Assembly: GCA_038496445.1 (NCBI GenBank)
Contig: JALMLS010000418.1
Span: 1-64,000 of the forward strand
Origin: Trichosphaerium sp. ATCC 40318
Lineage: Eukaryota > Protista > Tubulinea
Length of the DNA: 64,000 nt
Reading direction: 5' to 3'
The position numbers and the translations under genes were made by a program. A model generated the notes under the pieces. That model was not told where the DNA came from. It searched no databases and saw only the letters and a list, made by a program, of their open reading frames with translations. Shown in pieces: positions 56,410-61,046 of the stretch (positions within the stretch are counted from its first letter, which is position 1; the number at the start of each line of letters is the position of its first letter).

Positions 56410-56941
56410 ATGATGCGTCTTATCCTTGTTGCTTTTGCGCTCGTAGCACTTGCTATTTGCCTAGATGTTGTTCCACACGGTGCTTACTGTGGCTCTGACT
56501 CTTCACTCTTTACTATCCGTGTCGATGTAGTTTCTCTTACCGCCATTAATGTAAACGCTACTGTACTTGGTATGCCAGCGTATTGCGCAGACGAGGCTGT
56601 ACGTTCTAGTGATGCTCTTTTCCAATTTTTAAAACGATTGAGTAGGTAACGTACGACGATTCAACACACGTGATTACTATTCCAAACATTAACAAGCCTG
56701 ATGATTGCTTTAACAAGATTCTTGTTGGTAACGGCGTAGACCCAAGCGAAATCACCGTCACCTTCGCTCCAGCTAACAATACTATCATTATCGATGCCTC
56801 TGGAGCTACTATTGACATGCCTGAATGCACGAGCACTCTATCCATTGTAAGAGAAATTTTTTTTTTATGTCGTTTGTATTAACCACGCTGTAGTTGAATT
56901 CTGCTGAGTGGGCCAAGCTTGAAAAGCAGATTCGCGGTTAA
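56410..56941 (+). CDS. Small secreted protein with four to five Cys
   Basis: Signal peptide MMRLILVAFALVALAIC; three exons; PHGAYCGS..YCADEA..PDDCFNKIL. Confidence 0.7.
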
Positions 56942-57553
56942 ATTCAATAAAATGACGTCACTTCACAGCAAATTCGTTTTTGGTTTGTTTACAAACACTT
57001 TGTCAACGCAAAGCACGGTTTCCGTGCGAAAAGAGGAGAAATGGAGACTAAGAAAAGTAGTACTACTTTCTTTCCATCTTACATTCTATCCTTCTTCAAG
57101 AGTAAGCTACGGAGATAATAATCGCCGTCAGTGTCGCATTTTTTATCAAAACCTGTTTCACGCAGCTACATCATAAGTTTTGTCCAGTGATATTAAAATT
57201 TTGACACTTTTTGGTCATTTTGACACGTGACATTTAGAAAACACTACCCAGTATCAAAAAAAATGGTGCGCTCCTACGCTCGGTTTGTCATATCGTCTAC
57301 GCAGCAAACTGATAATTCAATGAACTTCAACAAAACATGTTGTGGATTGTTGGTTGATTAGGCTAAGGCAGATGTTTTACTTGAAAGCCAACACCGCCAG
57401 TGTAAGTCGAAACATAAACAGTATTTCCAATGCGGCGTGTACAGCGTGAGTGCTAGACGGAGTTTCTATTTTTTCTGCCGTGGTTTTTTATTTGAAAATG
57501 TCAGTTAAGCTTGTAGAGTAGCTAATTGCACTTACTTCTACCACGAACAACGT

Positions 57554-59504
57554 ATGGAGCCGTCAGCAGACAGCAATAAAACAACTGTACGCTATTCTAC
57601 AAAAATAGGCAATCACTAACGTGATGCGCTTAATACGCTGTGAATAGCGTTATAGCGTGGTTTTAATGTATTTACAATGTTTAGCCTACTAAAGCGCCTG
57701 CATGGAATCTAGCCATATCCTCGGAGCATCGCTTACGCGCTGAGAACCTCGCGTTTGATATAGACGTCTGGTATCCAGCTTTGAAGCAGTTTACTTTCCC
57801 AACGCTTTTCCACCCTCTCACGCGTACTGAGGCTACAGCTATATTTAACCACTATCGAACAAAGAACGGTTTAAAGCGAGATGCCGACTTGTCTCTTCAG
57901 GATATTCAAGCTTTGGATTCTTTAGAAAAACAACTCGATGTTTTGATTAAAACCAACTTTGGTGACACAGGTGCTTTTCTTAGATTATGTGGAAGAAGCC
58001 CTAAGGATGCCGATCCTCTTGATTACGAGAGCGTATACAGGAGATATACAGAACTATTGGCTGAGTACGAGAAAGAAGGAGAAGATCCAGATGATCCGAG
58101 TACAAAAGTAAAGGTAAAAAACACGTGTTTATTTGGCCGTTATTGTTTGCTATCTAACGGTGTTAATACTGATTTTAGGCGATTGCCCACGTATCAACAT
58201 TGCAAGTGAAATCAGGAGAAGAAGCTATGAGTTTGATTCTAACAAGTGAAAGGGTTTATGCCGATATTCTTGATTGGGTGTTATATGGTGAACCAGAACA
58301 AATAGTCTTACGTCAAGTACTAGCACGTAGCTTTTTGTTCACAGTACTAATTGCGTTGTATTTTAGTGGGAACCAAATTTATCTCTAGATTATGAGTTCC
58401 GTGCTTTTGTATGTAAGAACAAGGTTACTGCAATATCACAATATGATCATTATGGTGTATACCCTTACATATTCCCACTTAAAGAACGTATTCAACATCT
58501 CATACTTGAGAAGTGGGCTGAAGTTCATGAACATGTTGGTATGTAGTACAGTTGTTGTTGGATTATTTTCATAAGTGTTCCTCTTGTCTAATAGTAAATG
58601 TAGGTATTCCTAACTATTGTATGGATTTTGGCTACCTTCCTAATTCAGACAGTATTGTTGTTATTGAATTAAGTCCTTTCATGGACTGTACAGGGACCGC
58701 ATGTTTCAAGTGGAGTACAGATAGAGATTTACTCGAGAATGGCCCACTGACTTTCCGTATGAACCAGAAAATGCGTCCAGATATGGCTCAGGTATTAGAA
58801 GTAAACTGGGATATGGAATGGACAAAGAATGTGAAGCCTTACAAGGTTTATTTGGAAAAAGTTAAAAACAAGTTGTCAAAGGATTCTTCAATGTTAAGTG
58901 ACGCTGGGTCATGGTTCATGTCAAAGTTAAACACTGTGTATAAAAGAGAACCTAATGTACTTTTCGTTTATGGCACGTTGAAGAGAGGGTTTCATTGGAA
59001 CATGAAGTTTTTACAGAAATCAACTTTCGTATCAAAAGCAACAACAAATGTCGCTTTCCCGCTTGTTTTTGGGGAATCTGGAGTACCTTATCTTCTGGGA
59101 GACCAAGAAGGTAAAGGACATATGATTAGTGGCGAGCTTTGGCGTATCAGCGATGAAACACTTCTGGGACTAGACGAATACGAAGGTGTATCAAAAGGGT
59201 TAGTACAACTTTTTTTAACTTACTTTTCGGCTTGAGCTTGCATGCTCTCTTTAGAACTGACGTTGTCATAATTCTCACTACTTTTAGATACTATGAGCGT
59301 ATTGAGATCAAAGTAAAGAGAGAAGGAAGTACACGCGATGTAGTGGCATTTGTATATTGCTTAAAAAAGTCAACAACAGAATTGCTTGAAAAACCTTTCC
59401 AGAAAGCTTACGACTTAGCTTTTCATCAGAAGAATTATGATGCTATTAGACATATCCTTGTAAAACAAGAAAAATATCTTGGTCTAGCTGATGGTAAAGA
59501 TTAA
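57554..59504 (+). CDS. CDC123/R2K-clade ATP-grasp domain fused to a gamma-glutamylcyclotransferase (GGCT/GGACT, AIG2-like) domain
   Basis: FLRLCGRSPKDA, LILTSERVYADI, EFRAFV..AISQY and DF..VIELSPF (CDC123/R2K). In the same open exon: LFVYGTLKRGF..PYLL..ISGELW..LDEYEG, then YYER..AFVY (GGCT). Confidence 0.88.
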
Positions 59505-59806
59505 TCTAAAAATACAATACAGTCACGTGTGCTTGTGTCGAATAAATAACTTACATTCGCCTTTTTGTTTCATTTTGTCTTTAAACTATCCGGATCTTTT
59601 TACCATCTTGAGGTTCACACTTACTGTTATTTGTATGATGTTTATATTAGTTTATGTACCTTGATAGCCGTTTTGTAGCAAAAATGTAGTTTGTAGTTTA
59701 TAGTATGAGAACGAAGATGATAATCTTTATTGTTTTTGTAGTAACAACCCTAAGGCTCTTTGTTCTATTAATGAGGAACGCACGCAAAAAGACACGTGAG
59801 TGACTG

Positions 59807-60204: not shown

Positions 60205-61046
60205 ATGGATGAGCAAATCGATACAAGCCCTGAAAACAGGTGTATTAACATAATGCTTGTTGGAGACATAAATGTTGGTAAAACTAGCTTTTTAATGACC
60301 CACGTTAATGGGAGGCGACCTACAACTGAATTTCCGGCGCTTTTACCTGATTTTAAAGAAACAATAATATTTCGTGGCTCAACGCACGAGAGACAACTCA
60401 TTGATACATACCTGTGCGTAGCAGCCAATAAAATAAAAAAAAAACTCAAAAAATGCCGTTAGCTATGGTTACTATTCAGGAAGTCATGATATTAAACAAA
60501 AATGTACCTTTAAACAAATGGCAGAGCTTCAAGGTGGCAGGGTTCGTTTTGTAGTCTTATTTTTCAGGGAGAAACAAACTTATGTTGACATTCAGAAAAA
60601 AATAGGAAATTGATGTTTTCTTGTGTTGCTTTTCGTGTATAGACTTATGTTCTCTTGAACACTTACGGTATGTGCATGAATGCTTGCATGTTATATAACG
60701 CCTATATAGTGACGTTTACCACCCAGAAATAAAAAGATATTTCCCAGATGCAAAGATTGTTCTTTGTGGACTGAAATCAGATCTTCGGACTAGTTTAAAT
60801 ACCGTACAATCAGATAAAGTATTAATTGCAGTGTCTCATAACGATATTGATGAGATAGCTCAAGTACTTGAGGTGTGCTTGTCCAATTTACCACTGCGCA
60901 TGCTTATTTGTGGCTAGGCTTTTGCAGTATGTGAGTGCAGTGTCCTTGAAGGAAAGAAGGAGGCTGATAAGGTACTAGGTATTTGTATGTGTGCAGGTTT
61001 GGGATTGCCTATTATGAAGCCTAAAAGAAGTTGTGTTTTGATTTAG
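60205..61046 (+). CDS. Atypical Rho-family small GTPase
   Basis: IMLVGDINVGKTS, DVFLCCFS, IVLCGLKSDLR, ECS, and a polybasic plus CaaX end KPKRSCVLI. Confidence 0.85.

What the first reader, a model, noticed from the sequence alone, without database searches (positions are those of the whole stretch)
57554..59504. CDC123/R2K ATP-grasp ligase fused to a gamma-glutamylcyclotransferase: a possible writer-eraser enzyme
Seen: both domains run through one uninterrupted ORF (58552-59235), so the fusion is not a splicing guess. The RSPKD, SER, EFR and IELSPF motifs and the GGCT catalytic LDEYEG motif are intact. Established: R2K/CDC123 enzymes are predicted peptide or protein ligases expanded in amoeboid eukaryotes, and GGACT-type enzymes cleave gamma-glutamyl-amine (isopeptide) bonds. 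Inference: one polypeptide could form and remove a gamma-glutamyl linkage, or ligate and then cyclise. That would be a modification cycle I do not know to be described.
Basis: partly seen in the sequence, partly recalled or inferred. Interest (0 to 1): 0.8.

Follow-up and report, generated by a model that had tools for sequence, protein, structure and literature searches.

The report
CDC123-like ligase fused to GGACT
This amoeba gene really does join a CDC123-like ATP-using enzyme to an enzyme that cuts gamma-glutamyl-amine bonds. It is one member of a large, well-conserved protein family found across many protist groups and in rotifers, and I found no paper that describes it.

Summary
A six-exon gene (57554-59504, + strand) encodes a 527-aa protein. 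All five introns are seen spliced out in public transcript contigs, and one contig runs from the ATP-grasp domain into the GGACT domain.

The N-terminal ~335 aa belong to the CDC123 (R2K.1, Pfam D123) ATP-grasp family. This domain is not the eIF2-assembly CDC123 ortholog: it is only 18-20% identical to solved Cdc123 structures, and ExS replaces the canonical DxN motif. The C-terminal ~150 aa are a GGACT-type gamma-glutamylamine cyclotransferase with the YGTL motif and the catalytic Glu (E451, equivalent to human E82).

The fusion is not peculiar to this genome:
- At least 106 full-length relatives share the architecture.
- They come from Amoebozoa, Heterolobosea, malawimonads, foraminifera, stramenopiles, choanoflagellates, Syssomonas and rotifers.
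- The closest are 47-50% identical end to end.
- The window protein keeps 92 of the 94 nearly invariant family positions.

A relative folds with pLDDT 93 and pTM 0.91, which suggests a fixed two-domain body. About a third of relatives carry a membrane-hairpin-like stretch in the linker.

I found no paper describing the architecture. The make-and-break reading on a gamma-glutamyl-amine bond remains an inference. It has precedents in trypanothione synthetase-amidase and in BtrJ/BtrG.

The parts
57538..57553 (+). 5' untranslated leader; the transcript 5' end lies at about 57538
   Evidence: The X3 contig starts here, preceded by a template-switch (SMART) oligo loose end (table 7).
57554..57586 (+). 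Exon 1, residues 1-11 (start codon at 57554)
   Evidence: Joint 57586/57685 with GT..AG in transcript contig X3; translation.
57685..58113 (+). Exon 2, residues 12-154. It holds the family-specific N-terminal motif (EHRLRAENLAFDIDVWYP) and FLRLCGRSPKD (R111, K118; RSPKD at 57994-58008).
   Evidence: joint 58113/58179 seen in X1, X2 and X3.
57771..57831 (+). Optional 61-nt intron inside exon 2. Removing it shifts the frame and gives a stop 13 codons later, so this isoform is unproductive.
   Evidence: Joint with GT..AG in X2 and X3 (another strain, 2 SNPs) but not in X1. The frame was worked out from the sequence.
58179..58316 (+). Exon 3, residues 155-200. It holds TSERV (SER at 58245-58253) and GEPEQIVLRQ (R199).
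58367..58538 (+). Exon 4, residues 201-258. It holds the ExR motif (EFR at 58394-58402) and SQYD.
   Evidence: Pfam D123 at 27.3 bits on this exon alone; it aligns to EFRCFV and ISQRD of human CDC123.
58604..59198 (+). Exon 5, residues 258-456. It holds the end of the ATP-grasp domain (D265 at 58624-58626; E279-L-S281 within IELSPF at 58663-58680), a 36-aa linker, and the first two thirds of the GGACT domain (YGTL at 58969-58980; catalytic E451 at 59182-59184 within LDEYEG at 59170-59187).
   Evidence: (GGACT E 3.6e-13).
59288..59504 (+). Exon 6, residues 456-527 plus the stop codon. It holds the rest of the GGACT domain (Y458, R460) and a conserved C-terminal tail (Y497, Y506, H511, K515, Q516, Y519).
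   Evidence: Joint 59198/59288 in X1; conservation.
57709..58836 (+). CDC123-family (R2K.1) ATP-grasp domain, residues ~20-335 (introns included in this span)
   Evidence: With the profile of family alignment A1, the only PDB hits are CDC123: 8phd at 1.8e-18 and 4zgn at 1e-12. Foldseek of the model of relative P0174 gives Cdc123 at TMt 0.6-0.68.
58954..59501 (+). GGACT-type gamma-glutamylamine cyclotransferase domain with its C-terminal tail, residues ~375-527 (one intron included)
   Evidence: Pfam PF06094; human GGACT 3jub at E 4.5e-8 for relative P0006; Foldseek 1vkb and 3jub at TMt 0.78, rmsd 1.7-1.8 A, 30-32% identity.

Best explanation
The gene encodes a soluble, expressed, two-domain enzyme that belongs to a conserved family found across eukaryotes.

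Shown:
- The N-terminal domain has the CDC123 (R2K.1) ATP-grasp fold and keeps its nucleotide- and metal-site residues.
- The C-terminal domain is a GGACT-type cyclotransferase and keeps its catalytic glutamate and substrate loop.
- The two domains are always in this order, and a relative is predicted to fold as one fixed body.

Inferred:
- The ATP-grasp domain uses ATP to activate a carboxylate as an acyl-phosphate and joins it to an amine.
- The fused partner says which bond is concerned: a gamma-glutamyl-amine bond in which the glutamate keeps its free alpha-amino group.
- The GGACT domain breaks such a bond. The alpha-amine attacks the gamma-amide, releasing 5-oxoproline and the free amine.
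- Together they would form a make-and-break pair that sets the level of a gamma-glutamylated amine.
- The high sequence conservation across supergroups suggests a small molecule (a polyamine, lysine or another amine) rather than a protein.
- The two activities would have to be kept from running as a futile cycle by domain-level regulation, as in trypanothione synthetase-amidase.
For: Anatomy and expression.

Family:
- 146 clusters (50% identity) match exon 5 at E<=1e-10, many across both domains.
- 198 proteins match at E<=1e-10, and nearly all of the 120 listed carry PF07065 plus PF06094.
- Named sources span six or more eukaryotic groups.
- Identity is 47-50% end to end.

Active sites:
- R111, K118, S177-E178-R179, R199, E210-F211-R212, D265, E279, S281, Y380-G381-T382-L383, E451, Y458 and R460 are each at least 90% conserved in 106 relatives.
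- The window protein keeps 92 of 94 such positions.
- E451 aligns with E82 of human GGACT.
- D265 and E279-x-S281 align with the D and DxN of human CDC123.

Fold: pLDDT 93.2 and pTM 0.91 for relative P0174. The nearest solved structures are Cdc123 and GGACT.

Precedents: an ATP-grasp synthetase fused to an amidase that undoes its product (PMC2427367); a gamma-glutamyl group removed by the cyclotransferase BtrG in butirosin synthesis (10.1101/2025.01.15.633182). That this group is put on by the ATP-grasp enzyme BtrJ is my own recollection.
Against: - No CDC123-family protein has a demonstrated ligase activity. The canonical protein is an ATPase and chaperone (PMC12860950).
- The Asn of the ExN/DxN metal motif is Ser throughout this family, and the effect on catalysis is unknown.
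- Nothing here shows that the ATP-grasp domain binds glutamate or activates its gamma-carboxylate.
- Fused enzymes more often catalyse consecutive steps than opposing ones.
- An unregulated pair would simply burn ATP and turn glutamate into 5-oxoproline.
- I could not read model coordinates, so I do not know whether the two active sites face each other.
- The structure was predicted for a 50%-identical relative, not for the window protein.
Confidence: 0.38

Rival explanations
1. Consecutive steps of a salvage pathway, not opposing ones. The GGACT domain frees 5-oxoproline and an amine from gamma-glutamyl-amines, such as gamma-glutamyl-epsilon-lysine left after digestion of cross-linked prey proteins. 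The ATP-grasp domain then spends ATP on one of the products. It could re-use the amine in another amide, or act on 5-oxoproline itself, for example in an ATP-dependent ring opening.
For: Fusions usually join consecutive steps (general knowledge). The family is commonest in phagotrophic protists and rotifers. A fixed two-domain body (pTM 0.91) would suit handing over a product. High conservation (47-50% across supergroups) fits housekeeping metabolism.
Against: No ATP-grasp enzyme is known to open 5-oxoproline; the known 5-oxoprolinases belong to other folds (my own knowledge). The ExR motif places the R2K clade among amide-forming ligases (PMC4431377). The family also occurs in photosynthetic diatoms and raphidophytes.
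Confidence: 0.2
2. The ATP-grasp domain is not a ligase. As in canonical CDC123, it would be an ATP-binding or ATP-hydrolysing module that holds or regulates a partner. The GGACT domain would be the only chemical catalyst, switched or targeted by the ATP state.
For: Canonical CDC123 has ATPase and chaperone activity only (PMC12860950, PMC8844851). The Asn-to-Ser change in the metal motif is universal in the family. The nearest structures are Cdc123 complexes with eIF2-gamma domain III.
Against: There are many invariant polar residues beyond the nucleotide site (E25, H26, R29, E31, N32, D36, D38, S177-E178-R179, D183, D186, E192, E194, Q195). Together with very slow evolution, this looks like a small-molecule pocket rather than a protein-binding surface. 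Identity to CDC123 is only 18-20%.
Confidence: 0.15
3. A protein-directed writer-eraser. The enzyme would attach a free glutamate through its gamma-carboxyl to lysine side chains (or other amines) of proteins and take it off again as 5-oxoproline. This would be a reversible, ATP-driven protein modification.
For: R2K enzymes were predicted to be protein-peptide ligases (PMC4431377). Chemically, a gamma-glutamyl unit with a free alpha-amine on a protein lysine would be open to GGACT-type cyclisation. A third of relatives are anchored by a hairpin-like linker, as enzymes acting on localised targets might be.
Against: As I recall it, GGACT acts on free gamma-glutamyl-amines rather than on proteins. 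No such modification is known. The strong conservation without a co-conserved partner is uninformative. Nothing tested here points to a protein substrate.
Confidence: 0.12
4. Protecting-group logic, as in butirosin synthesis. A gamma-glutamyl group would be put on an amine of a biosynthetic intermediate, other enzymes would act, and the same protein would then remove it.
For: BtrG removes a protective gamma-glutamyl group by cyclotransfer (10.1101/2025.01.15.633182, citing Llewellyn 2007). That the group is added by the ATP-grasp enzyme BtrJ is my recollection.
Against: No biosynthetic cluster context exists in eukaryotes. The domain is GGACT-type rather than BtrG-type: the best matches are 1vkb and 3jub, while YkqA (2qik) and YtfP (1xhs) are weaker. 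The distribution is broad, housekeeping-like and pan-eukaryotic.
Confidence: 0.1
5. Artefact: two neighbouring genes wrongly joined, or a pseudogene.
For: Two transcript contigs of another strain carry an extra 61-nt splice that breaks the frame.
Against: One exon (58604-59198) holds parts of both domains. The X1 contig spans both domains in frame. 106 relatives have the same architecture. 92 of 94 conserved positions are kept.
Confidence: 0.01

Closest known systems
CDC123 / D123 (R2K.1 family of ATP-grasp proteins; Pfam PF07065; structures 4ZGN-4ZGQ, 8PHD)
   Same: - Same fold: Foldseek TMt 0.6-0.68.
- CDC123 is the only PDB family hit by the family profile, at E 1.8e-18.
- Shared WYP, ExR (EFR) and SQ.D motifs and the strand-4 Asp.
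- Two positive residues in the FxRL...SPKD segment.
   Different: - Only 18-20% identical.
- Pfam matches cover only model positions ~105-279 of 300, at 50-75 bits.
- The metal motif is ExS instead of DxN.
- There is an extra, strongly conserved N-terminal segment (EHRLRxENLxFDID).
- It is fused to a GGACT domain.
- It is therefore a paralogous subfamily, not the eIF2-assembly factor.
GGACT (gamma-glutamylamine cyclotransferase, A2LD1; Pfam PF06094; structures 3JUB, 3JUC, 1VKB)
   Same: - YGTLKRG loop.
- Catalytic Glu (E451, equivalent to E82).
- Y458 and R460, matching Y-x-R after the Glu.
- 30-32% identity, rmsd 1.7-1.8 A.
   Different: It is not a free-standing ~150-aa protein. It is the C-terminal domain of a 527-aa enzyme and has an added conserved tail (IRHILVKQxxYLG). 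Its substrate is not known.
Trypanothione / glutathionylspermidine synthetase-amidase
   Same: One polypeptide joins an ATP-grasp carboxylate-amine ligase to an enzyme that undoes an amide to an amine, and regulation is needed to avoid a futile cycle (PMC2427367). This is what the protein would work like.
   Different: The ATP-grasp family is unrelated. The breaking domain there is a CHAP/papain-like amidase placed at the N-terminus and works by hydrolysis. Here the breaking step would be cyclotransfer, which gives 5-oxoproline, so the glutamate is not recovered directly.
BtrJ / BtrG of butirosin biosynthesis
   Same: A gamma-glutamyl group on an amine is removed by a GGCT-fold cyclotransferase (10.1101/2025.01.15.633182). 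By my recollection it is added by an ATP-grasp ligase.
   Different: These are separate bacterial proteins in a biosynthetic cluster, working on a carrier-protein-bound substrate. The cyclotransferase is of the BtrG subfamily, not GGACT.

Membership tests
CDC123 / R2K.1 ATP-grasp (Pfam D123) | Match to Pfam PF07065 above the gathering score | tested here: met
   Exon 4 alone scores 27.3 bits against a cut-off of 24. Full-length relatives score 50-75 bits.
CDC123 / R2K.1 ATP-grasp (Pfam D123) | Cdc123-like ATP-grasp fold | tested here: met
   Tested on the model of the 50%-identical relative P0174 (pLDDT 93). The top Foldseek hits are 4zgp, 4zgo and 8phd, at E 2e-11 to 4e-10 and TMt 0.6-0.68. 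It was not tested on the window protein itself.
CDC123 / R2K.1 ATP-grasp (Pfam D123) | ExR motif at the start of the kinase-like domain | tested here: met
   E210-F211-R212 aligns to EFRCFV of human and S. pombe CDC123 and is at least 90% conserved.
CDC123 / R2K.1 ATP-grasp (Pfam D123) | Two positive residues: a conserved Lys in RAGNYA strand 2 and a Lys/Arg in the following loop (the 'R2K' signature, PMC4431377) | tested here: inconclusive
   FLRLCGRSPKD has R111 and K118, both at least 90% conserved, in a predicted strand followed by a loop. No tool gave a residue-level alignment of this segment to CDC123. The first position would be Arg rather than Lys.
CDC123 / R2K.1 ATP-grasp (Pfam D123) | Acidic residue in strand 4 plus an ExN/DxN metal motif in strand 5 | tested here: inconclusive
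   D265 aligns with the Asp of FVFDI, and E279 with the Asp of IDFNPF. The Asn position is Ser281 in at least 95% of the family. The acids are kept and the Asn is replaced.
Canonical eIF2-assembly CDC123 ortholog | Close, full-length similarity to CDC123 of model organisms | tested here: not met
   phmmer of relative P0006 against human CDC123 gives E 5.9e-5 over ~100 residues. Identity in structural alignment is 18-20%.
GGACT (gamma-glutamylamine cyclotransferase, PF06094) | Match to Pfam PF06094 above the gathering score | tested here: met
   50.6 bits against a cut-off of 22.8, E 3.6e-13, on exon 5 alone.
GGACT (gamma-glutamylamine cyclotransferase, PF06094) | YG(T/S)L substrate loop and catalytic Glu (human E82) | tested here: met
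   Y380-G381-T382-L383 and E451 are present. The Glu aligns with E82 in 3jub and with Q82 of the 3jud mutant, shown for relative P0006. Both features are at least 90% conserved. The features are as described in 10.1101/2025.01.15.633182.
GGACT (gamma-glutamylamine cyclotransferase, PF06094) | GGACT fold, closer to GGACT than to GGCT, ChaC or BtrG-like proteins | tested here: met
   1vkb and 3jub give TMt 0.78 at rmsd 1.7-1.8 A. GGCT (2rbh) gives 0.53, ChaC2 0.4 and YkqA 0.33 (relative's model).
GGACT (gamma-glutamylamine cyclotransferase, PF06094) | Release of 5-oxoproline from gamma-glutamyl-amines | not testable with these tools
   This needs an enzyme assay.
Bifunctional synthetase/breaker enzymes (works-like class: TryS/GspS) | Both domains act on the same amide bond | not testable with these tools
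   Only the fusion, its conservation and the fixed predicted arrangement (pTM 0.91) speak for coupling.

The most novel reading that the evidence does not exclude
This family would be the first CDC123/R2K ATP-grasp whose chemistry can be read from its partner. On this reading it is an ATP-driven gamma-glutamyl-amine synthetase paired with its own cyclotransferase eraser. It would run a reversible gamma-glutamylation cycle on protein lysines, polyamines or membrane amines in many eukaryotic lineages, in soluble and membrane-anchored forms. That cycle has gone unnoticed because animals other than rotifers, fungi and plants seem to lack the gene (none appears among the hits).
Probability: 0.13. 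Interest if true: 0.85.

Novelty: new variant of a known kind. Interest (0 to 1): 0.58.

Why it matters
Since 2015 the CDC123/R2K clade has been predicted to be amide-forming ligases. No substrate or product has been shown, and the canonical protein behaves as an ATPase and chaperone.

A slowly evolving subfamily that is permanently fused to a gamma-glutamyl-amine-cleaving enzyme gives a concrete chemical hypothesis that can be tested directly: gamma-glutamyl-amine bonds. The family is soluble in some members, well expressed and folds confidently.

If the two domains do act on one bond, this would be a second, independent case of the synthetase-amidase design known from trypanothione metabolism, and perhaps a new metabolite or protein mark. 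If they do not, the gene is still a conserved but unstudied eukaryotic enzyme missing from the usual model organisms.

Tried and rejected
- The whole spliced protein could not be sent to the search, fold or look-up tools. It has no reference, and reading through introns meets stops. I therefore used exons by reference and full-length relatives returned by the searches. The structure is for P0174 (Mastigamoeba balamuthi, 50% identical), not the window protein.
- Bacterial or archaeal relatives of the ATP-grasp subfamily, sought for operon context: the search for related loci on genome contigs matched 178 patterns, and none was confirmed.
- Giant-virus or phage relatives: none.
- Exon 2 alone against PDB: only chance-level hits (glutamate dehydrogenase, E 0.07). 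No residue-level alignment of the RSPKD segment to CDC123 was obtained.
- Tree of 30 named family members: poorly resolved, and the careful search did not finish. The window protein sits on a long branch with no supported sister. Some lineage-coherent groups appear (forams, Archamoebae, protostelids).
- Short 'stand-alone' D123-only or GGACT-only hits (P0237, P0059-P0062 and others): these look like pieces of fused genes cut by introns or contig ends. They are not evidence for split forms.
- The window protein itself was not found in either protein collection; the best match is 56% identical over exon 5.
- Earlier scan notes by place and by sequence: none for this locus.
- The chimera and pseudogene readings were rejected.
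Full report
**1. What is in the sequence**

The region is eukaryotic: 37-42% G+C with short GT..AG introns. Joining six exons gives a 1584-nt reading frame of 527 codons. The exons are 57554-57586, 57685-58113, 58179-58316, 58367-58538, 58604-59198 and 59288-59504.

That single exon carries the last third of the ATP-grasp domain (D265, IELSPF), the linker, and the first two thirds of the cyclotransferase domain (YGTLKRG, LDEYEG). So the fusion does not depend on any splice prediction.

Pfam on single exons gives D123 on exon 4 (27.3 bits, cut-off 24) and GGACT on exon 5 (50.6 bits, cut-off 22.8, E 3.6e-13).

**2. Expression and splicing**

Public runs from three studies hold the locus. Their contigs were laid on the window.
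- One 1535-nt contig (X1, no differences from the window) covers 57737-59540. It lacks the four downstream introns exactly as modelled, including the intron that splits the GGACT domain.
- X3 shows intron 1 and begins at 57538, right after a template-switch oligo, which marks the 5' end.
- X2 and X3 come from another strain (two SNPs). They also lack 57771-57831, a 61-nt stretch with GT..AG ends. Removing it shifts the frame and gives a stop 13 codons on, so this isoform is unproductive.
- X2 also skips 72 nt in frame (58413-58484).

These are contigs, so they say nothing about expression levels.

**3. It is a family, not a one-off**

An exhaustive HMMER search with exon 5 found 1115 cluster representatives at E<=0.001. 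Of these, 146 reach E<=1e-10, and many of the best are 500-650 aa long and aligned over both halves of the query. Ten of them were checked and all have D123 followed by GGACT.

A word-based search with relative P0006 gave 198 proteins at E<=1e-10. Nearly all of the 120 listed carry PF07065 plus PF06094. Source names place them in:
- Amoebozoa: Mastigamoeba, Pelomyxa, Planoprotostelium, Protostelium, Clastostelium, Luapelamoeba, Physarum, Balamuthia
- Heterolobosea: Acrasis
- a malawimonad: Gefionella
- Holozoa: Syssomonas, Diaphanoeca
- foraminifera: Nonionella, Bolivina
- stramenopiles: Heterosigma, Seminavis, Epipyxis
- a dinoflagellate transcriptome: Polykrikos
- a rotifer: Didymodactylos

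The ESM Atlas holds two clusters of this shape, with 216 and 52 members.

The spliced window protein aligns with these relatives from about residue 5-20 to 521-526 at 47-50% identity, with E down to 1e-177. This also validates the gene model. No bacterial, archaeal or viral relative of this ATP-grasp subfamily was found. Where the databases name these proteins at all, the name is 'gamma-glutamylcyclotransferase' or 'AIG2-like'.

**4. The two domains**

The family profile of the N-terminal part hits only CDC123 in the PDB: human 8PHD at E 1.8e-18 and S. pombe 4ZGN at 1e-12. Aligned motifs are LRxW, EFRxFV, ISQxD, the strand-4 Asp, and IELSPF against IDFNPF.

AlphaFold2 on the family alignment was run with Mastigamoeba P0174 as target, which is 50% identical to the window protein. 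It gives pLDDT 93.2 and pTM 0.91 over all 513 residues. A pTM this high would not be reached if the two domains were placed at random relative to each other.

Foldseek finds Cdc123 for the first ~340 residues (TMt 0.6-0.68, 18-20% identity). For the last ~150 residues it finds mouse and human GGACT (TMt 0.78, rmsd 1.7-1.8 A, 30-32% identity). These matches are well ahead of GGCT, ChaC2, YkqA and YtfP.

The ATP-grasp domain is therefore a CDC123-family paralog and not the eIF2-assembly factor. By sequence alone, P0006 reaches human CDC123 only at E 5.9e-5 over ~100 residues.

**5. Are the sites alive?**

In 106 full-length relatives, 94 columns are at least 90% one residue, and the window protein matches 92 of them. 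The matching positions include:
- R111 and K118 (FLRLCGRSPKD)
- S177-E178-R179
- R199
- E210-F211-R212
- Q225-Y226-D227
- D265
- E279 and S281-P282
- in the second domain: Y380-G381-T382-L383-K384, E451, G452, K455, Y458, R460

E451 is the counterpart of human GGACT E82, the proposed catalytic base (10.1101/2025.01.15.633182).

The one departure from ATP-grasp expectation is that the Asn of ExN/DxN is Ser throughout the family. PMC4431377 notes that this Asn is sometimes replaced by other polar residues.

A strongly conserved N-terminal segment (E25, H26, R29, E31, N32, D36, D38 before the WYP motif) and a conserved C-terminal tail are specific to this family.

**6. How it probably works**

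Shown: a real, expressed, conserved two-domain protein with both residue sets intact and a confident joint fold.

Established from the families:
- R2K enzymes sit among amide-forming ATP-grasp ligases (PMC4431377).
- Canonical CDC123 itself has so far been shown only to bind and hydrolyse ATP while assembling eIF2 (PMC12860950, PMC8844851).
- GGACT converts gamma-glutamyl-amines to 5-oxoproline plus the amine (10.1101/2025.01.15.633182).

Inferred: the permanent fusion means the ATP-grasp domain deals with gamma-glutamyl-amine chemistry. My preferred reading (about 0.38) is a make-and-break pair on one gamma-glutamylated amine. Cyclotransfer needs the free alpha-amine of the glutamate, so the 'writer' would have to activate the gamma-carboxyl of free glutamate.

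There are precedents for this design. Trypanothione synthetase-amidase joins an ATP-grasp ligase to an amidase for its own product, and its C-terminus gates the amidase site (PMC2427367). BtrG removes a gamma-glutamyl protecting group (10.1101/2025.01.15.633182).

The rivals are:
- a consecutive salvage pathway (0.2)
- a non-ligase ATP module that regulates or targets GGACT (0.15)
- protecting-group use in a biosynthetic route (0.1)
- artefact (0.01)

The 47-50% identity between supergroups favours a small-molecule substrate.

**7. Comparison with the known, and novelty**

Both domains belong to known families, and the architecture sits unremarked in public protein sets. Full-text searches found nothing on the combination. 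I searched CDC123/R2K/ATP-grasp, D123+GGACT, CDC123+GGACT, R2K+cyclotransferase and amidoligases+cyclotransferase. The founding R2K paper mentions no cyclotransferase fusion.

The library lacks most subscription journals, so the absence is not proof. I rate this a new variant of a known kind. The window gene is an ordinary member of a family I could not find described.

**8. Context in this genome**

First-stage notes list other CDC123/R2K-like fusions in the same genome: with a legumain-like peptidase and a 2OG oxygenase, with PTH2, with a RhoGEF, and with a WH2 peptide. They also list a neighbouring ligase/peptidase pair. I did not test these. If they hold up, this amoeba repeatedly couples such ATP-grasp domains to bond-breaking enzymes.

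**9. Limits**

- Model coordinates were not readable, so the distance between the two active sites is unknown.
- The organism was not identified beyond 'amoeba-like'. The best relative is an archamoeba, but the tree is unresolved.

Noticed in passing
Relatives P0013, P0181, P0007, P0171, P0001, P0015, P0094 and others (linker between the two domains): 33 of the 106 full-length D123+GGACT relatives have 1-3 (often two) hydrophobic, transmembrane-like stretches inside a lengthened inter-domain linker (60-130 aa). This points to a membrane-hairpin-anchored form with both domains on the same side. The window protein (36-aa linker) and Mastigamoeba P0174 are the soluble form.
   Followed up: partly
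window 57771-57831: An optional 61-nt GT..AG intron lies inside exon 2. It is spliced out in transcript contigs of another strain (X2, X3) but kept in X1. Removing it shifts the frame and stops translation 13 codons later, so this could be an unproductive or regulatory isoform.
   Followed up: partly
window 58413-58484: One contig (X2) skips 72 nt in frame with GT..AG ends. This removes 24 residues between the ExR motif and D265 of the ATP-grasp domain. It is probably splicing noise.
   Followed up: no
window 60205-60462 (+): This ORF starts with a P-loop small-GTPase N-terminus (NIMLVGDINVGKTSFL). The Ras and Roc Pfam matches are below their cut-offs (E ~1e-3). It is probably the first exon of the next gene downstream.
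   Followed up: partly
window 56410-56649 (+): This ORF begins with a signal-peptide-like hydrophobic N-terminus (MMRLILVAFALVALAICL). It has no Pfam match.
   Followed up: no
same genome, other windows (scan notes s1-393413, s1-397145, s1-400902, s1-390947, s1-406926): First-stage notes report further CDC123/R2K-like ATP-grasp domains fused to other partners in this genome: a legumain-like peptidase plus a 2OG oxygenase, PTH2, a RhoGEF, and a WH2 peptide. If they are real, this is a lineage expansion in which such domains are repeatedly joined to bond-breaking enzymes.
   Followed up: no
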